Shown here piece after piece: positions 7,101 to 43,613 of a stretch of DNA of 50,918 nt. Made by a program: the position numbers and the translations under genes. Where the stretch lies: sequence record NC_029020.1, one strand, 5' to 3'. The notes under the pieces are model-generated. The model did not search any database. It worked only from the letters and a program-made list of their open reading frames with translations, and had not been told where the DNA came from. How positions within the stretch are numbered: the stretch's first letter is position 1; every line of letters starts with the position of its first letter.

Positions 7101-10100
7101 GAAGGTCTCGCCAACTTCATCAACACGGCAATAAACGACCTAATGAACGACATTAACAACTTCATTTATTCGCACTTAGGTCAGAACGTTTTCACTGAAG
7201 TCCTAGCGGGGATCGTCGACGGTGCCATACTCGTACTGATCTCACTCATTCCTATCTTTGGGAAGGTCTTTGACTATTTGTCGTTTATATCCTTTATCGG
7301 TAGTACGGTATTTGATCTGCTAGCTGGCCCAGCGTCGTTCAACGAGACCGTTAACTCGTTCAAGGAGATGTTGACGAGCCCAACGTCATTAGCAATGATA
7401 GGGACGCTTTTGGTCGGCGGGATTGCTACGGGATTGATAAAACCGAGCAACATAGAAAGCGTTGGCCTAGCCAAGACTGTGGACAGTGTTAAATCGGCTC
7501 TGTCGAAGATTGAGGATTCAATAAAGGACAGGGTCGACATAACAACGATAAGCGATAAGGTCATCGGTACTATCAAGAGCGATGTAGCTAAGTCTTCAGA
7601 CTTCTCGAAAGTTAACCATTTGGTGAAAGAGATAGACCCCGAGAAGCTGGACACTAACGCACTGAAAAATAAGGGTTTAGGCAACACGATAGTGAAGATC
7701 GAAGGCGATGCATACAAATTCATTCAAATTGATACATCCAATTCAAAGATCACAATAGAGACTTACTACGTGTTCAAAAACGTGAGACTGAAAGTGGTTA
7801 AGGGAGTCGACAAGGTTGAAGTAAGGCTTAGAAAAGATTTCACTGGTAAGATAAAAGTAGGCGTCAAGCCAAAGCTTACTGATCAATTAATTGCGACGCT
7901 TAAAAACGGAATTGAAGGTAAAATGCTCCACGTCATAGTAAATATCAAGAATACTGTAAAGAATTTACTTTCCTCAAACAAGTTACCCGAGGCTCTAGAG
8001 ACCATCAAGCTTAACCTGGCGTCGATTGTCGCTAGACAGCTGTTTAAAGACCTCCAAAAGGCGAACGGCAATGCGGTGAAGATATCCCCGTACGAGAAAA
8101 TAGCCTATATCGACGGTAAGTTCTGGGACTTTGTATACAACGAGAACGGCACTCTCAAGGAGANGAATAAGATAAATGACCTAGAGGCGTTAGCTAAGCT
8201 GACGGAGTTCGCGGAGAAGGAGGTAGGCAACTTCGTTACAATGAACAAAAACTTGATAGAACAGTTGCTGGAGAGTAATAAAAACCTGAAGAGCATTGAG
8301 TATTATTTGACAAATAAGCTTACGGGCAACGTCGTAAGGAATGAGTATGTGGAGCTTGAAGACCTGTTAGGAAAGAAGCTGAAGTTCACGTCTGAGACCG
8401 AGATAAACACCGGCGAAATAAAAACGACCAAGACAATTAAAGGAAATTTCCCGCGTGAATTATTACAAAGCATTACTCAACAAGAGAAAAGTATTCTGAC
8501 GCCACAAGAAGTNGCNGACNTACTCAGTTACGATAACAGGNTCTCACGGATATTCAGGCCACTAATTGACGAGCATCCCGAGGTCAAGGAGTTACTAGAG
8601 AAATTAGCGTCGAAAGGGAAACTGACCAACGATATCAATCAGCTGGAAGAAATAGCCAGCAAAATAAAGTCGTTTTACAAGGCTCTGGACAGCGAAGTGG
8701 AAGACATAATGAAAGTCATAAATGATAATCTTAGCAATAAACCACAACTCAACAAGCTGTTCTACGGCGTAGATCTCTCGAAGGTCGTTAATAAGATTGC
8801 TGATAAGATTGCGGAAAAGCAAATACTGAACGACCCCGATGCTGTACTGAACGGCGAAAGCGGAGTACCTAAAATCTCTCTATCGGACGTCCTAAAACAC
8901 TTTAGCATGTCGAACAAGGCTAAGGTTGTCTTAAACTACCTGGAGGCAGATTCCAAGGTATATAACGAGGTAATGGGGAAGCTGAAGAATTTCTCTCCCG
9001 AGGCCAGGGATTATATTCTGGCAGAGGTATTCGACCATCAGTTCGTCGTAGCGATTACTGATGCTATAAAGGAGAATAAGGATATATCGATAACTCCCGA
9101 AGGGCTTGAAAACGTAGTCCAAGATATAGACGATGTTATAGAAACTATCAAAATTGAAGGCCCTCAAGGGTCGCAGGTACCTGTCTCAACGAGCTCAACA
9201 AGCACCACCTCTAGCGGTACCGCTTCGACAAGTTCTACGGAGGGTGCGGTTTCCAGCACCGCTTCGAATGCCAGTTCGAACGGCACCGCTACAGTCCTAC
9301 AGCCTCCAGCACAGCAGTCAGTACAGCAAGGGGCTCAAGCACCGATATCGCAGATCGCAACGCTCAAAAACGCGTTGCCAGCAACGTTCCCGAAATTCAA
9401 CGAACTGCCGTCGGGTGCGAAATTCTTATTCATGGATATTGTCGAAAGACTGTTAGAAGAAAAGGGAGAACTATCACCGGAAGAACTACAGGAGGCGTTA
9501 GAGGACGCAAAGGCGAAGTACCAAGCACAGTTTCAGGCGATACTTGACAGCCTAAAGAAGATGGTCAACGACGTGAAAGCCGAAGCGACGTCTAGTAGTG
9601 AAGAGGAAGCCGTACTGAACAGCCTAGATAAGGGCATAGGCGAGCTGGAGAAGAAAGTAGGGTTCGATCTGCGGAGGCTCTCGTACTTCCTGTCCATCGC
9701 GAGCTTCGTAGCGGACAGGTACAACGTAGCTACGGCGATCGAACTCTTAGACCAGCTGAACTCGCTCACCCCGCAACAGCTACAGAACGTGATTGTCCTT
9801 ACCCAGCCACAGATAGATACGTTAACCAAAATCTCTCCGCTCCTTAAGGAGCTGATCGTAAAGCTTAACAAGGGAGTGAAGACGAAGGACGTGCTGGATA
9901 TAGCAACGGTAATTAAGGAAGCCCTGGAGAAGATGGGAATTAACCTGGACGTCGAGCAGTTAATTAGGGTGATCAACGCGTTACAGACCCTGACTCAGCA
10001 GTTCAATTTNNAAATCAGTGATATAGCGACCCTGATAGCTGTAAGCGACCTCAACGGTCTACTGGCCATTCCCGTTCCTATANTATCCAACCTCAAGTCG

Positions 10101-35569: not shown

Positions 35570-35622
35570 GATATTTAAGCTTTCTGCCTGACTGGTAAGG
35601 TAGAAAAAAGGCTATTGGCTTT
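35570..35622 (-). promoter_or_regulatory. Conserved promoter cassette A (palindromic operator plus BRE/TATA)
   Basis: Minus strand ...CCTTACCAGTCAGGCAGAAAGCTTAAATATC; 53 bp identical to 36897-36949. Confidence 0.85.
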
Positions 35623-39272: not shown

Positions 39273-40196
39273 CTACGTGATTATTTTGATGCTGAAAATG
39301 CGTGAAGATGGATTAAATAATAAAATTCGTAACCTTTCATGCTTCAGCTTTTTGACGAATCTCTGATTGTTGACCTTGTAATCAACAACGAAGCGTTTGA
39401 GCCCGGTTATGTAATCCGGCAACGTTTTATATAACTTGACCGCCTCCTCCCTTTTACCGTCCTTCAGAAGTAACAGTACAACGGCTACCTTGACCAATAT
39501 CGGGTTGTACAGCTTTAGCAATTTATCAAGGAGATTAACATACCCGTATTTGCTCAGGAGCTCGTACGTATACTGCCTTAGCTTTCGCATTTTCGTCTTT
39601 AGTAAACCCTGCATTTCTTCCTTCGTTAAGCCGAGCTTCTCTTTCAGGACGTAACTTAATTCGAACATGGCATCGGATAGTTTCTGTTTTATTGTGTCCT
39701 CATCATCAGTTGAGAAATTACCGATTAGCTGAATGATGCGGTCTGGCTCGACGTCGCAATACTGAATAGCAAAAGCACCCAATATGTAGAGCTTGTTTGG
39801 AATTTTCCTGCGGAGCATCTTTTGTGCTATTCGCCTGAAGAGGGCTTTCTGTGCAGAGTCCGAAATTAACAAAGAAACCCTATATGCAAAGGAATAATAT
39901 TTCAGTCTCGTGTCGTATTCTACAGGGATCGTGCTGATTCCACCGTACGGTAAAAATGTATTTGCGGGACGATAATGGGTATAAATTTTATATACTATGT
40001 TGAACCTGCTTGACGAATCGTCTATTCCTTCTAAATTGCTGGCGAAGTACTTCTCGTAGTCGTAGCCGATTACTTCTCCGTTGTCCGCACAGACGAGATA
40101 TATGCCGTGAGTCACGATTTGTTTACACTGAACACTTTCAGACTGGTCAAAAAACATTTGGCCGAAAGTTTGAGTTTGAACGACTGCTTCTGTCAT
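39273..40196 (-). CDS. Hypothetical protein, 307 aa
   Basis: Long ORF. Confidence 0.7.
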   Translation of the reverse strand: MTEAVVQTQTFGQMFFDQSESVQCKQIVTHGIYLVCADNGEVIGYDYEKYFASNLEGIDDSSSRFNIVYKIYTHYRPANTFLPYGGISTIPVEYDTRLKYYSFAYRVSLLISDSAQKALFRRIAQKMLRRKIPNKLYILGAFAIQYCDVEPDRIIQLIGNFSTDDEDTIKQKLSDAMFELSYVLKEKLGLTKEEMQGLLKTKMRKLRQYTYELLSKYGYVNLLDKLLKLYNPILVKVAVVLLLLKDGKREEAVKLYKTLPDYITGLKRFVVDYKVNNQRFVKKLKHERLRILLFNPSSRIFSIKIIT

Positions 40197-40330: not shown

Positions 40331-40552
40331 TCACTTTTCTGCTTTCAACAATATCTCGTAAGGGCTTGGAACGTTGTAAATTAAAGATTTAAGATTTTCT
40401 AGTATTTTCGATATTCCATCATATACGCTGTCATACTTAGGATTNTCTTCGCTGAGATAAAAGTAATCTTTTTCTAAATCCTTAAAATACCTTAAAATCT
40501 CTTCCAAAGACCTTTTGTACTGTTCATAATGTTTGTCTGCATTGTCCAGCAA
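40331..40552 (-). CDS. Small helical hypothetical protein (probably the 3' part of a gene starting ~40668, disrupted by Ns or a frameshift)
   Basis: ORF track; upstream promoter at ~40700 and ATG at ~40668. Confidence 0.45.
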   Translation of the reverse strand: MLDNADKHYEQYKRSLEEILRYFKDLEKDYFYLSEXNPKYDSVYDGISKILENLKSLIYNVPSPYEILLKAEK

Positions 40553-40745
40553 TGTAAGTAACTTAAGTTAGCTCTTTCTCCTTTAATAATGTAAGAACGC
40601 TCTTACCTTCAGTGGTCGAATTTTGNTTANNGTTTTCTGTACTTTGTTCGTCCCAGAACTCCTGAGCCATACTTATCCCATGCTGATTCTCTCAAACGGC
40701 TGTATAAAAGCTTTATGTCGGAAAGCATATAATGGATCGGTGTTT

Positions 40746-41003
40746 TCATTCCTCTGGGATTATTTCCTTGATGTAAGCCTTATGGATGTATGTGGTTCTA
40801 TTTGACATGTCTACAAATTCTATGAAGTATTTTTGATTGTCGTTTATCTTACCCTCTATCGTGGAACCGTCGTGAAAAACTATTCTGCATGCCTTCCCTA
40901 CCCACTTCTTCCCGAAATCGCCGAACTCCTTAACGCCGTTTTTCTGCTCCTGCTTCATNTTCATNTTTTGCTTCAAGCTTTTCACCCCGATGCCCGAATT
41001 CAA
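40746..41003 (-). CDS. Sm/Lsm/Hfq-like fold protein
   Basis: WVGKACRIVFHDGSTIEGKINDNQKYFIEF...TTYIHKAYIKEIIP matches the Sm1 (V.I.L.NG..L.G.I) and Hfq Sm2 (MVYKHAISTVVP) patterns. Confidence 0.65.
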   Translation of the reverse strand: MNSGIGVKSLKQXMXMKQEQKNGVKEFGDFGKKWVGKACRIVFHDGSTIEGKINDNQKYFIEFVDMSNRTTYIHKAYIKEIIPEE

Positions 41004-41170
41004 ATTTAGCNGATTAGGTTTTTAAAGNANGNNGNCTGGTGCTTTCCTATNTGCCTCAAACGGCTGTTTGAGCCTGCCTCAGGCTATAAGCCCGTAATCC
41101 GTATGATTCTGACGGGCGAAAATATTAAAAACCGGGATGTGCTAAAATATACGAAAAGGAGGCCAGAAAA

Positions 41171-41737
41171 ATGCAGGCTAAACCAAGTTACATAGACCCG
41201 ACCTCAATAAATAAGCTTTTCGGTCAAGCTCCTTTCAGGTCTGAAAAGGTCGCCAAGATATTTGAGNTNCTNAGCCTGGGCAGACCGATGTTAGCGAGGG
41301 ATCTGGCAGAGGCAATTAACGTCCCTTCGAAGCAGATCCTGCCGAGGCTGAAGAGGTACATCCAGAGGGGATGGGTCGCCGTCCAGAAGGTAAACAACAT
41401 CAACATCTATTCCCTCACCGAGACGGCCAGGAANATATTGAAGCTACAGGGCAGTTTCGANAAGGTAAGGGAGAAGGCCGAGAAGGTCTTAGGGAGGAAG
41501 CTGGAAAGCGACGAGCTGGAGATCCTGAAGTTCTTCTATAAGGAGCAGAGGTACATAGAGAACTCTCCGAATGAGACGATTGCAGAGCAGGTGTGGCACT
41601 CCGTCGGGATGAAGATCCCCTTGTCAAGGGTACAGGAAATACTAACCGAGTTCACGCTGAGAGGGATCCTGTTCGCCTTCAGGCTGAAGAACGGGCAGAT
41701 CTTGAAGGTGAGGCTGAACAGNAACCTCCTTCTCTAG
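41171..41737 (+). CDS. Tandem winged-helix DNA-binding protein
   Basis: ARDLAEAINVPSKQILPRLKRYIQRGWV...YSLT plus a second wHTH-like half (LSRVQEILTEFTLRGIL). Confidence 0.75.
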   Translation: MQAKPSYIDPTSINKLFGQAPFRSEKVAKIFEXXSLGRPMLARDLAEAINVPSKQILPRLKRYIQRGWVAVQKVNNINIYSLTETARXILKLQGSFXKVREKAEKVLGRKLESDELEILKFFYKEQRYIENSPNETIAEQVWHSVGMKIPLSRVQEILTEFTLRGILFAFRLKNGQILKVRLNXNLLL

Positions 41738-42158: not shown

Positions 42159-42240
42159 CTCTCCAGTAGTAGTTATTGCAAGCGGTTTGCCGGATTGACT
42201 GGAGATCGTCAAACCGTCTGGCCCTCAAACAGCCGTTTAA
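42159..42240 (+). repeat. ori-like element 1 upstream of Rep
   Basis: 21-bp CTCTCCAGTAGTAGTTATTGC, hairpin CGGTTTG..CAAACCG, then TCAAACAGCCGT; homologous to 43378-43457. Confidence 0.85.
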
Positions 42241-43377: not shown

Positions 43378-43457
43378 CTCTCCAGTAGTAGTTATTGCGG
43401 GTAGTTGGTCGGCCTGACAGGGGATTGGGTTAACCACACGTCAAACAGCCGTATAAC
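43378..43457 (+). repeat. ori-like element 2 downstream of Rep, same orientation as element 1
   Basis: Identical 21-bp CTCTCCAGTAGTAGTTATTGC, similar core (CGG..TGAC.GG.GAT), then TCAAACAGCCGT. Confidence 0.85.
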
Positions 43458-43613
43458 GGTTGGATATTGACTTCCTTCCAGCTCTGAAGGGCGGTGTAGT
43501 TAACTCGAGCTGAACCGCGTTATTGTGTTGGACGCATGCTCCCTCAAACAGCCGTTTGAGGACAGCACAATGGTTGGCGGACAGTCCCAACCTCAAAAAA
43601 CGAAATCCTCTTT

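What the first reader, a model, noticed from the sequence alone, without database searches (positions are those of the whole stretch)
40746..41003. Virus-encoded Sm/Hfq-like protein
The sequence fits a minimal Sm fold with an Hfq-like short loop and YIHKAYI in place of YKHAI. Hfq-like genes are known on some euryarchaeal plasmids, but I do not recall a characterised one in crenarchaeal viruses. It could chaperone viral RNAs, bind crRNA, or poison host SmAP rings (inference). It lies beside the Rep/origin locus.
Basis: partly seen in the sequence, partly recalled or inferred. Interest (0 to 1): 0.6.

Follow-up and report, generated by a model that had tools for sequence, protein, structure and literature searches.

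The report
Hfq-like ring-protein gene in SMV2
A small gene of the hot-spring archaeal virus SMV2, so far labelled hypothetical, encodes a protein with the fold of the bacterial RNA chaperone Hfq. It belongs to a little-noticed Hfq-like family carried by archaeal viruses and plasmids, and what that family does is untested.

Summary
The window is the complete genome of Sulfolobus monocaudavirus SMV2. The finding is its gene gp46 (annotated 40746-40976, minus strand, "hypothetical protein"). In detail: it is a real gene under strong purifying selection (dN/dS 0.05-0.1).

The Sm/Hfq reading also holds, on several lines of evidence:
- The AlphaFold2 model (core pLDDT about 90) is a short helix plus five bent strands.
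- All top 50 Foldseek PDB hits are Hfq. VIA-align gives Z 9.2 to Synechocystis Hfq and to the Methanococcus jannaschii Hfq-like protein.
- A profile of the wider family hits M. jannaschii MJ1435 by sequence (E 3.7e-5).
- The same profile matches the Hfq-like proteins of Thermococcales plasmids (hhalign 97%).

ATV ORF86 is a clear relative (hhalign 98%). The family is patchy in Thermoproteota (9 of 401 genomes) and sits on mobile elements.

It is not a canonical Hfq. It carries the motif [IV]-N/H-K-A-Y-I, with an invariant Lys, in place of YKHAI, and it falls below the curated HMM cut-offs. Ring assembly could not be judged (no verdict), and RNA binding is only inferred.

Hfq-like proteins were already reported on archaeal plasmids and in Pyrobaculum spherical virus, so this is a new member of a known kind. 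The gene heads a conserved module next to a winged-helix gene and a possible TFB-like gene.

The parts
40746..40976 (-). gp46 coding sequence as annotated (TTG start). The conserved core begins at ATG 40958 (70 aa, P0002).
   Evidence: purifying selection; Hfq-like fold
40755..40892 (-). Five-strand Sm barrel: residues 23-68 of P0002, strands b1 23-28, b2 33-41 (Gly36), b3 45-50 (Tyr44/Phe45), b4 55-59, b5 63-68. The HKA (family NKA) turn lies at residues 59-61.
   Evidence: DSSP of the AF2 model; family conservation; alignment to MJ1435
41019..41026 (-). TATA-like box TTTAAAAA of the gp46 promoter. A near-identical CTTTAAAAACC...GCTAAA is present before the homologue in L004.
   Evidence: sequence reading; promoter function is inferred
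40982..40986 (-). GGTGA Shine-Dalgarno-like motif 5 nt before the annotated TTG start.
   Evidence: sequence reading
41056..41071 (.). Palindrome TCAAACGGCTGTTTGA between the divergent gp46 and gp47 promoters. It is one of five copies clustered at 40.69-43.56 kb.
   Evidence: 13 strand-matches against 0.5 expected; the same palindrome occurs in the homologous intergenic region of L004
40692..40707 (.). Second copy of the palindrome (2 mismatches), 39 bp downstream of the gp46 stop in the gp46-gp45 spacer.
40331..40552 (-). gp45, a 73-aa ORF downstream on the same strand. It is variable: other small ORFs fill this position in related elements.
39273..40196 (-). gp44, 307 aa, the conserved downstream partner of the Hfq-like gene in SMV2, L004 and L015/L016. 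It may have a cyclin-box or TFB-like fold (weak support).
   Evidence: synteny; fold
41171..41737 (+). gp47, 188 aa, annotated 'conserved conjugative plasmid protein'. It is transcribed divergently from gp46 and is the conserved neighbour in L004 and L015/L016. Homologues lie on Sulfolobus plasmids pSOG1/2 and pTC.

Best explanation
gp46 encodes a 70-76-residue protein of the Sm superfamily, of the Hfq-like type: a short N-terminal helix, five bent strands, a short b3-b4 loop and no extra domain. It belongs to a family of Hfq-like proteins carried by mobile elements of hyperthermophilic archaea. That family also includes ATV ORF86, unnamed genes on crenarchaeal virus- and plasmid-like contigs, and the Hfq-like domains of Thermococcales plasmids.

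By analogy with Hfq and the M. jannaschii Hfq-like protein, it most likely assembles into a ring, probably a hexamer. That ring would bind single-stranded, U-rich RNA in pockets formed at subunit interfaces by the conserved aromatic of strand b3 (Tyr/Phe44, aligned with Hfq F42) and the invariant Lys60 (aligned with Hfq K56). The Lys/Arg-rich disordered N-terminal tail seen across the family would assist binding.

In SMV2 it is the first gene of a conserved gp46...gp44 unit, transcribed divergently from the winged-helix gene gp47, inside a plasmid-derived regulation/replication block. I therefore read it as a small nucleic-acid-binding regulator of the element's own gene expression, acting on transcripts either after or during transcription.

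Shown here: the gene is real, the fold, the family relationship and the synteny. Inferred: the ring, RNA binding and the regulatory role.
For: Fold:
- The AF2 model has mean pLDDT 80 and about 90 over residues 21-70, with a helical turn plus five strands.
- All 50 best Foldseek PDB hits are Hfq (best 3hfo, E 3.9e-4, TM 0.68/0.72).
- VIA-align against 48,161 chains gives 3hfo Z 9.2, M. jannaschii Hfq-like 2qtx Z 9.2 and other Hfq proteins Z 8.3-8.9. SmAP and LSm chains reach only Z 6.6-7.3.

Sequence:
- The close-homologue profile A1 finds about 25 small proteins sharing DF..E..G...v.L.dG..i.G......[YF][WF]IK......Y[IV]NKA[YW]I..I.P.
- The family profile A2 hits MJ1435 over its full length (E 3.7e-5), followed by LSm6, LSm2 and SmD1.
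- Three members hit TIGR02383 Hfq (best E 1e-5).
- Member P0036 finds the plasmid genes annotated 'RNA chaperone Hfq' on pIRI48 and pP12-1.
- hhalign of A2 against those proteins gives 97% probability, E about 5e-11.
- hhalign against ATV ORF86 gives 98.4%, E 8e-15.
- ESM features place it nearest to Hfq_1 clusters, score 0.92.

Other support:
- The Gly in the middle of b2, which the Mura 2013 review calls strictly conserved, is present as G36.
- The family is basic, median pI about 9.5, and the N-terminal tails carry on average +3 net charge.
- dN/dS is 0.05-0.11.

Context:
- The gp47-like / Hfq-like / gp44-like arrangement recurs in SMV2, L004 and L015/L016.
- In L019 the same slot holds a ribbon-helix-helix gene plus an 87-aa ORF, so the slot takes small regulators.
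- The plasmid relatives sit in replication operons (PMC3543421).
- The distribution is sporadic: 9 of 401 Thermoproteota species genomes, mostly on short contigs.
Against: - No direct evidence for a ring. The four-copy complex job gave no verdict (0.32 against a mark of 0.42).
- No RNA or binding data exist, and no RNA-seq run holds the locus.
- The canonical Hfq residues are only partly kept. The His57 position is Ala, the Tyr55 position is Asn/His, and the Gln8 position is not conserved. These correspondences come from the HMM alignment to MJ1435 and the DSSP register, carried onward to E. coli numbering from my knowledge of the Hfq sequence.
- No member reaches a curated NCBIfam cut-off.
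- gp46 or its close homologues alone give no significant PDB sequence hit. The link needs the wider family profile.
- A Z of about 9 for a 60-residue barrel is only a little above background, and a designed SH3-like barrel also scores 9.1.
- From memory, untested here: the best structural match, Synechocystis Hfq, is reported to bind RNA poorly and to act through a protein partner.
- SMV2's own protein is nearly neutral (pI 7.8 for the 70-aa form).
Confidence: 0.55

Rival explanations
1. The Sm barrel works on DNA or at the transcription machinery and not as a free RNA chaperone. It would be a small repressor or co-factor that binds the element's DNA (for example the TCAAACGGCTGTTTGA palindromes or the origin region) or nascent transcripts, together with wHTH gp47 and the possibly TFB-like gp44. 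In that role it would control replication or early transcription of the plasmid-derived block.
For: - Palindromes flank the gene and mark the neighbouring promoters and are conserved in L004.
- In L019 the same slot is filled by an RHH DNA-binding protein.
- Most Thermococcales and Methanococcales relatives are fused to a C2H2 zinc finger and sit in the helicase operon. Their authors proposed DNA-directed action (PMC3543421; PMC3710371).
- Both Hfq and SmAPs bind DNA non-specifically (PMC3710371).
- gp44 gives weak TFIIB/Brf/cyclin matches.
Against: - gp47 (wHTH) is a more obvious reader of a 16-bp palindrome.
- gp46 has no zinc finger or other DNA-reading module.
- Known Sm-DNA binding is weak and non-specific.
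- The gp44 fold assignment is below the reliable range (Z 7.2, Foldseek E 0.037).
Confidence: 0.2
2. It is an anti-defence or host-takeover factor. The ring would sequester host RNAs (crRNA, small RNAs, or signalling oligonucleotides of type III CRISPR), or it would serve as the RNA-level regulator of an anti-defence operon.
For: - In the viral contig L002 the homologue is packed tightly (4-bp and 5-nt spacings) between a 30-aa ORF and a homologue of SMV2 gp41 (48% identity).
- gp41 is listed as predicted anti-defence gene ADG.64 (PMC11065993 supplement).
- In ATV, ORF86 overlaps by 4 bp with ORF167, a weak gp41-like match (E 1e-5).
- The L002 operon has a TATA box bracketed by inverted repeats.
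- The gene lies in the variable accessory third of the SMV2 genome, near the predicted anti-defence genes.
Against: - gp46 is not among the seven SMV2 entries of the ADG table.
- It lacks the SMV2 ADG operator-promoter, which is found only at 35572, 36899 and 38077 at up to 3 mismatches.
- In three other elements it travels with gp47 and gp44 instead.
- The plasmid relatives sit in replication operons.
- No known anti-CRISPR has an Sm fold (my knowledge).
Confidence: 0.12
3. It has an Hfq-like fold but no nucleic-acid role. It would be a protein-binding adaptor or structural or assembly factor, in the manner of Sm-fold proteins such as cyanobacterial Hfq, YaeO, or the spore proteins GerQ and CgeA.
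For: - The best structural match is Synechocystis Hfq, and the nearest feature clusters are the cyanobacterial Hfq_1 family.
- YaeO, GerQ and CgeA score Z 7.8-8.3.
- The canonical His and Gln of the Hfq pocket are missing.
Against: - The Lys aligned with K56 is invariant and the aromatic aligned with F42 is conserved across a very divergent family.
- The family has basic pI and Lys/Arg-rich tails.
- The closest sequence relative with a structure, MJ1435, binds sRNAs and partly complements hfq mutants (PMC3710371).
Confidence: 0.1
4. The ORF is not a functional gene: a chance frame or decaying remnant.
For: It is short, has no Pfam or NCBIfam assignment, the start codon is ambiguous, and the record contains N bases.
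Against: - dN/dS is 0.05-0.11.
- There are 33 invariant columns among 10 homologues.
- The fold prediction is confident.
- A conserved promoter and synteny are present.
Confidence: 0.02

Closest known systems
Hfq-like proteins of Thermococcales and Methanococcales plasmids (pIRI48 gp2, pP12-1 gp2, pCIR10 gp2, pMETVU01; Krupovic et al. 2013, PMC3543421)
   Same: - Same sequence family: hhalign 97%, E about 5e-11.
- Shared signature P/K-Y-[FW]-I-K ... [IV]-N-K-[AG]-[YA]-I..I.P.
- Carried by mobile elements of hyperthermophilic archaea.
- pIRI48 gp2, like gp46, lacks the zinc finger.
- No function has been tested for any of them.
   Different: - Most plasmid proteins carry an N-terminal C2H2 zinc finger and are 107-178 aa.
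- They lie directly downstream of a UvrD-like helicase in the replication operon.
- gp46 is a bare 70-76-aa Sm domain that heads its own unit beside a wHTH gene, in a crenarchaeal virus.
- Pairwise similarity to gp46 itself is undetectable by tblastn.
Methanococcus jannaschii Hfq-like protein MJ1435 (PDB 2QTX, 4X9C, 5DY9)
   Same: - Best solved sequence relative of the family profile (E 3.7e-5, full length), with a top structural score (Z 9.2, rmsd 2.6 over 57 residues).
- About 70 aa, with a basic N-terminal tail, a short helix and a short L4 loop.
- It forms hexamers and binds sRNAs (PMC3710371).
   Different: - MJ1435 is chromosomal and keeps the canonical F-K-H-A-I motif, whereas gp46 has I-H-K-A-Y-I (family I/V-N-K-A).
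- Hexamer formation and RNA binding are shown for MJ1435 and not for gp46.
Bacterial Hfq (TIGR02383 / PF17209; e.g. 1KQ1, 1HK9) and cyanobacterial Hfq_1 (PF21979; 3HFO)
   Same: - Overall fold and size.
- The Gly in b2, an aromatic at the F42 position and a Lys at the K56 position.
- All top-50 Foldseek hits and the nearest language-model clusters are of this kind.
   Different: - gp46 falls below every curated cut-off.
- The Gln8, Tyr55 and His57 equivalents are absent.
- The N-terminal helix is much shorter (three residues by DSSP).
- It is of archaeal-virus origin.
Pyrobaculum spherical virus ORF137 (PDB 2X4J)
   Same: - A crenarchaeal virus protein with a C-terminal domain that weakly matches the family profile (hhalign 61%, motif ...IYIHKDLV).
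- PSV is cited as encoding a variant Hfq-like protein (PMC3543421).
   Different: - 137 aa, with an extra N-terminal domain.
- The similarity is marginal.
- It belongs to a different virus family (Globuloviridae).
- That ORF137 is the protein meant by the citation is my inference, not stated in the text I could read.
Sm-like archaeal proteins SmAP1/2/3 of the host (e.g. S. solfataricus 1TH7)
   Same: Same superfamily fold (Z 6.7).
   Different: - These are heptameric, universal cellular genes with the Sm-type L3/L5 pocket, and they score lower than Hfq.
- The gp46 family is present in only 9 of 401 Thermoproteota genomes searched.

Membership tests
Sm/LSm/Hfq superfamily (Sm fold) | N-terminal helix followed by five strongly bent antiparallel strands forming a small barrel | tested here: met
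   The AF2 model has a helical turn at residues 17-19 and strands at 23-28, 33-41, 45-50, 55-59 and 63-68, with core pLDDT about 90. Hfq and Sm chains dominate both fold searches. The helix is very short.
Sm/LSm/Hfq superfamily (Sm fold) | Conserved Gly in the middle of the bent strand b2 | tested here: met
   G36 is invariant in the 10 close homologues and present in most of the 29-member family. The feature is as described in PMC3710371.
Sm/LSm/Hfq superfamily (Sm fold) | Statistically supported sequence relationship to known members | tested here: met
   Family profile A2 against PDB gives MJ1435 at E 3.7e-5, then LSm6 at E 0.013. This holds only for the extended family. gp46 alone or profile A1 gives nothing.
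Sm/LSm/Hfq superfamily (Sm fold) | Assembly into a hexameric or heptameric ring by b4-b5' pairing | tested here: inconclusive
   The four-copy complex job scored 0.38, 0.32 and 0.16 against a mark of 0.42, with controls at 0.00-0.01. The tool's verdict was 'no answer'.
Sm/LSm/Hfq superfamily (Sm fold) | Binding of single-stranded RNA | not testable with these tools
   Only indirect evidence is available: basic tails and conserved positions aligned with Hfq K56 and F42.
Canonical bacterial Hfq (TIGR02383 / PF17209) | Score above the curated family cut-off | tested here: not met
   gp46 does not hit Hfq models at E<=1. Only 3 of 29 family members do (best E 1e-5). No family reaches its cut-off for gp46 or for the ten further members scanned one by one.
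Canonical bacterial Hfq (TIGR02383 / PF17209) | Y-K-H-A-I motif at the b4-b5 turn (Tyr55, Lys56, His57) | tested here: not met
   gp46 has I-H-K-A-Y-I and the family consensus is [IV]-N-K-A-[YW]-I. Only the Lys is kept (invariant K60). In the register, the His57 position is Ala.
Canonical bacterial Hfq (TIGR02383 / PF17209) | Short b3-b4 loop and an aromatic at the F42 position | tested here: met
   The b3-b4 loop is 4 residues long. Tyr or Phe occupies position 44 throughout the family and aligns with the Tyr of MJ1435 'YEIM'.
Archaeal mobile-element Hfq-like proteins (Krupovic et al. 2013) | Homology to the Hfq-like domain of pIRI48, pP12-1 and pCIR10 gene 2 | tested here: met
   hhalign of A2 against pIRI48 gp2 gives 97.1% (E 6e-11) and against pP12-1 gp2 97.2% (E 4e-11). 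tblastn with member P0036 finds exactly these three plasmids.
Archaeal mobile-element Hfq-like proteins (Krupovic et al. 2013) | N-terminal C2H2 zinc finger | tested here: not met
   There are no Cys/His pairs before the barrel, and the N-terminus is a 10-20-residue disordered tail. pIRI48 gp2 also lacks the finger, so this feature is not obligatory.
Archaeal mobile-element Hfq-like proteins (Krupovic et al. 2013) | Position immediately downstream of the replicative helicase gene | tested here: not met
   gp46 lies between gp45/gp44 and the divergent gp47, and the Rep-like gp48 is 1.3 kb away. The plasmid genes follow a UvrD-like helicase.
Predicted anti-defence genes of SMV2 (Bhoobalan-Chitty et al. 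2024) | SMV2 consensus operator-promoter upstream of the gene | tested here: not met
   At up to 3 mismatches the motif is found only at 35572, 36899 and 38077. The gp46 upstream region differs. gp46 is not in the supplementary ADG table.

The most novel reading that the evidence does not exclude
The [IV]NKA Hfq-like proteins are a dedicated mobile-element toolkit for RNA-level control in hyperthermophilic archaea. The virus-encoded ring would capture host or CRISPR-derived RNAs, or work with a virus-encoded TFB-like factor (gp44) and a wHTH protein (gp47), to redirect host gene expression early in infection. If so, Hfq-type riboregulation, thought to be essentially bacterial, would be used by archaeal viruses, and this would be the first Sm-fold anti-defence or takeover factor.
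Probability: 0.12. Interest if true: 0.75.

Novelty: new member of a known kind. Interest (0 to 1): 0.42.

Why it matters
Most genes of crenarchaeal viruses have no assigned function. This result gives SMV2 gp46, ATV ORF86 and a set of metagenomic relatives a fold, a family and a testable activity. It also links them to the Hfq-like proteins reported on euryarchaeal plasmids in 2013.

The link shows one Hfq-like lineage spread across mobile elements of both Thermoproteota and Euryarchaeota, while cellular archaea rely on SmAPs. If the proteins bind RNA, they offer an entry point to post-transcriptional regulation in archaeal virus infection, which is almost unexplored. They are also small thermostable Hfq-type rings suitable for structural work.

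The gain is incremental: the kind was known, and the function remains inferred.

Tried and rejected
- **No direct PDB sequence link:** phmmer of gp46 and a profile of its close homologues against PDB sequences gave nothing meaningful. The link appears only with the extended family profile.
- **No direct hits in viruses or plasmids:** tblastn of gp46 against phage/virus and plasmid collections found only SMV2 itself and nothing in plasmids.
- **IMG/VR scan:** 127 pattern matches, none confirmed.
- **The search for related loci:** A2 is too divergent for the tool. P0020 found nothing in genome contigs. A sub-alignment then found three crenarchaeal MAG contigs.
- **Complex prediction:** The four-copy job gave 'no answer' (median 0.32, mark 0.42, controls about 0).
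- **Expression:** one metagenome DNA run holds 7% of the words and there are no RNA runs.
- **Anti-defence membership:** rejected for gp46 itself. There is no ADG promoter and it is not in the published table.
- **Paralogues:** none in SMV2, and no family member near the gp47 homologues on pSOG2 and pTC.
- **ATV ORF189 as a gp47 homologue:** rejected (E 20).
- **Sigma-70 promoter and terminator scan:** not informative for an archaeal virus.
- **SmAP poisoning:** no evidence. The protein is closer to the hexameric Hfq type than to heptameric SmAPs.
- **Nielsen 2007 (PMC2080587):** not held in the library, so residue-level statements about Hfq pockets rest on my knowledge and on the review PMC3710371.
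Full report
**What the window and the feature are.** A 6-kb stretch around the finding matches Sulfolobus monocaudavirus SMV2 (NC_029020/KP238129, 50,918 bp, circular, Bicaudaviridae) at 99.9% identity, and the window has the same length as that record. The finding is gp46 (YP_009219261), annotated at 40746-40976 on the minus strand as a hypothetical protein.

That start is unlikely. A TATA-like TTTAAAAA sits at 41019-41026, only 16 nt upstream, so transcription should begin near 40996 (inference from usual archaeal promoter spacing). A GGTGA lies 5 nt before the annotated TTG at 40976, and ATGs follow at 40964 and 40958. I used the 70-residue form from 40958 (P0002), which avoids the two codons that carry N in the deposited sequence.

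**The gene is real.** The 5.8-billion-protein index holds ten clusters of homologues, nine of them near full length (66-91% identity, 66-77 aa) and one a 40-aa fragment. All come from hot-spring metagenomes and none has a Pfam domain. Thirty-three columns are invariant among gp46 and the nine near-full-length homologues. Codon-level comparison with three homologues gives dN/dS of 0.05-0.11 where dS is measurable, and dS is saturated otherwise.

**Fold.** AlphaFold2 with this small alignment gives mean pLDDT 80 and about 90 for residues 21-70. The N-terminus (1-11) is disordered, followed by a helical turn and five strands.
- Foldseek against the PDB returns only Hfq chains among its best 50 (3hfo E 3.9e-4, TM 0.68/0.72).
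- VIA-align 2 against 48,161 representative chains, which does not rely on Foldseek, ranks Synechocystis Hfq and the M. jannaschii Hfq-like protein first (both Z 9.2). Other Hfq proteins follow at Z 8.3-8.9, and SmAP/LSm/Sm chains score Z 6.6-7.3.
- A designed SH3-like barrel also scores 9.1, and the tool warns that Z 7-8 is common background. The fold match alone would therefore not be decisive.

**Sequence evidence.** gp46 alone and the profile of its close homologues give no PDB hit. Their NCBIfam hits are all sub-threshold and fall on Sm-clan-like families: YgdI/YgdR and the RimP C-terminal domain.

An exhaustive profile search of 1.8 billion representatives found 31 proteins at E<=1e-3. 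About 25 are 65-105-aa proteins with a common pattern: a basic tail, DF..E..G, then v.v.L.dG..i.G, then [KR][YF][WF]IK, then Y[IV]NKA[YW]I..I.P. The few very long hits are repeat proteins that match only a short stretch, and I left them out.

The 29-member profile A2 gives the following links:
- It hits M. jannaschii MJ1435 (2QTX) over its whole length at E 3.7e-5, followed by LSm6, LSm4, LSm2 and SmD1.
- Three members reach TIGR02383 Hfq at best E 1e-5. Neither gp46 nor any of the ten members scanned one by one passes a curated cut-off.
- tblastn with member P0036 picks out SMV2 gp46 and ATV among viruses. Among 72,556 plasmids it finds exactly pP12-1, pIRI48 and pCIR10, at genes annotated 'RNA chaperone Hfq'.
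- hhalign of A2 against those plasmid proteins gives 97% probability (E about 5e-11), and the LINKAYI/LINKGAI motif is visible in the alignments.
- ESM-Atlas features place gp46 next to Hfq_1 clusters, score 0.92.

I consider the family assignment secure, at about 0.9.

**Relatives in viruses and cells.**
- BFVD Foldseek ranks ATV ORF86 second, after the gp46 entry itself, and hhalign confirms it (98.4%, E 8e-15). ATV2 and an ATV variant carry it too.
- PSV ORF137 (PDB 2X4J) matches weakly through its C-terminal domain (61%).
- The other homologues lie on virus- or plasmid-like contigs. One is a 15.7-kb contig carrying TFIIB, Cas4, ThyX, PAPS-reductase and integrase genes (L002). One is an Ignisphaera contig with an SSV-type integrase and a Cas4-like gene (L010). 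One is a Yellowstone contig that looks like a concatemer of a unit of about 6.5 kb with two paralogues per unit (L008). One is a 43.5-kb SMV-like contig (L015).
- Among 401 Thermoproteota species genomes, 9 have a match at E<=1e-3 and about 5 of those are strong. Three named hits are on short contigs of Desulfurococcaceae and Acidilobaceae MAGs.
- The distribution is sporadic and associated with mobile elements, unlike the universal SmAPs.

**How canonical is it?** I combined the HMM alignment to MJ1435 with the model's secondary structure (b4 ends at residue 59, turn 60-62, b5 from 63).
- The family's invariant Lys60 aligns with the Lys of F-K-H-A-I (E. coli K56).
- Ala61 takes the place of His57, and Asn/His59 the place of Tyr55.
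- Tyr/Phe44 aligns with the b3 aromatic (F42).
- The mid-b2 Gly is kept (G36).
- In my extension of that alignment to E. coli numbering, the Gln8 position of the N-terminal helix is not conserved, and the helix is very short.

By established knowledge of Hfq-RNA complexes, the aromatic and the lysine of the uridine pocket are retained and its other polar ligands are not. The family is basic (pI mostly 9-10) and its disordered N-terminal tails carry +3 charge on average. SMV2's own protein is close to neutral. This fits nucleic-acid binding but does not prove it.

**Ring formation.** The only available test, four copies with the family alignment, scored 0.38, 0.32 and 0.16 against controls of 0.00-0.01. 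The median is below the mark of 0.42, and the tool's verdict is 'no answer'. I treat oligomerisation as untested.

**Context.** In SMV2 gp46 is followed on the same strand by gp45 (73 aa) and gp44 (307 aa). It is transcribed divergently from gp47 (188 aa, 'conserved conjugative plasmid protein'). Further on lie a 550-bp non-coding stretch and the Rep-like gp48.
- The arrangement gp47-like / Hfq-like / gp44-like recurs in L004 (gp47 74% identity, gp44 49%) and in L015/L016 (79% and 64%). Different small ORFs lie in between.
- In L019 the gp47-like and gp44-like genes are present, but the slot holds a ribbon-helix-helix gene plus an 87-aa ORF. I read this as a slot for small regulators.
- gp47 homologues lie on Sulfolobus plasmids pSOG1/2 and pTC. 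No Hfq-like gene was found in the stretches fetched around them on pSOG2 and pTC.
- A 16-bp palindrome, TCAAACGGCTGTTTGA, occurs at 40692, 41056, 42225, 43441 and 43544 (13 strand-matches against 0.5 expected). It also occurs in the corresponding intergenic region of L004. It marks the whole block and is more plausibly read by the wHTH protein.

A second context exists. In L002 the homologue is squeezed between a 30-aa ORF and a homologue of SMV2 gp41. In ATV, ORF86 overlaps ORF167, a weak gp41-like match. gp41 is a published predicted anti-defence gene (PMC11065993). gp46 itself is not in that table and lacks the SMV2 operator-promoter.

**Interpretation.** The best-supported reading is a bare Hfq-type Sm protein of a mobile-element lineage. 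It most likely forms a ring that binds single-stranded RNA and acts as a small regulator of the element's own expression. The steps from fold to ring, RNA binding and role are inferred.

The rivals are:
- a DNA- or transcription-linked role, supported by the zinc-finger fusions of the plasmid relatives, the RHH replacement, the palindromes and a possibly TFB-like gp44;
- an anti-defence or host-RNA-sequestering role, supported by the gp41-like neighbours;
- a protein-adaptor role, as reported for cyanobacterial Hfq (my recollection).

**Novelty.** Krupovic et al. 2013 reported Hfq-like genes on Thermococcus, Pyrococcus and Methanocaldococcus plasmids. [quoted passage not shown] The review by Mura et al. 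repeats this.

No paper in the searchable library combines Hfq with Bicaudaviridae, or Sm-like with the two-tailed virus. The SMV2 and ATV genes are annotated as hypothetical. The finding is therefore a new member, and a crenarchaeal extension, of a known kind. It is useful annotation with a clear experimental path, not a categorically new system.

Noticed in passing
window 39273-40196 (-), gp44: The conserved 307-aa partner of the Hfq-like gene gives an AF2 model (pLDDT 72, C-terminal 200 residues 80-94) whose best matches are TFIIB/Brf/TFB, cyclins and Orc6. Foldseek's best hit is TFIIB at E 0.037. VIA Z is 6.5-7.2 with 160-178 residues aligned to Brf, TFIIB and P. woesei TFB. An N-terminal beta-ribbon carries two invariant Cys (C24, C36). 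It may be a very divergent virus-encoded TFB-like factor, but the scores are below the reliable range.
   Followed up: partly
window 40692-40707, 41056-41071, 42225-42240, 43441-43456, 43544-43559: Five copies of the palindrome TCAAACGGCTGTTTGA are confined to the gp45-gp49 block, and it is conserved in L004. It is a candidate operator for the wHTH protein gp47. It is distinct from the ADG operator-promoter at 35572, 36899 and 38077.
   Followed up: partly
L019:4295-4716: In a related element the slot between the gp47-like and gp44-like genes holds an RHH_1 gene plus an 87-aa ORF instead of the Hfq-like gene. This looks like non-orthologous replacement of one small regulator by another.
   Followed up: no
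L002:7840-8740 and L014 (ATV):9749-10509: In L002 the Hfq-like gene is co-operonic with a homologue of SMV2 gp41 (published predicted anti-defence gene ADG.64). The L002 promoter TATA is bracketed by GCGAAAT/ATTTCGC inverted repeats. In ATV, ORF86 overlaps ORF167, a weak gp41-like match.
   Followed up: partly
L008:1-15378: This Yellowstone contig appears to be a head-to-tail concatemer of a unit of about 6.5 kb (genes repeat at 7109/13575 and 7462/13920). Each unit carries two Hfq-like paralogues and a 325-aa protein with a weak AbiEi_4 hit. It may be a small circular plasmid or virus.
   Followed up: no
window, whole genome: The deposited SMV2 record contains 295 N bases. Several fall in the gp46 promoter, in two gp46 codons and in gp47, so exact residues and motifs there are unknown.
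   Followed up: no
L010:4833-8804 (Ignisphaera MAG contig): A family member lies next to a Cas4/PD-(D/E)XK nuclease gene and 2.2 kb from an SSV-type integrase (Phage_integr_3), so this is probably an integrated element. L002 also has a Cas4-like gene 2.6 kb upstream of its homologue.
   Followed up: no
NCBIfam NF041655 (MM0924 family) and NF047433 (Lepto_7_Nterm): Ten and sixteen of the 29 family members, respectively, give sub-threshold hits to these two uncharacterised small-protein families. Both may be further unrecognised Sm-like barrels.
   Followed up: no
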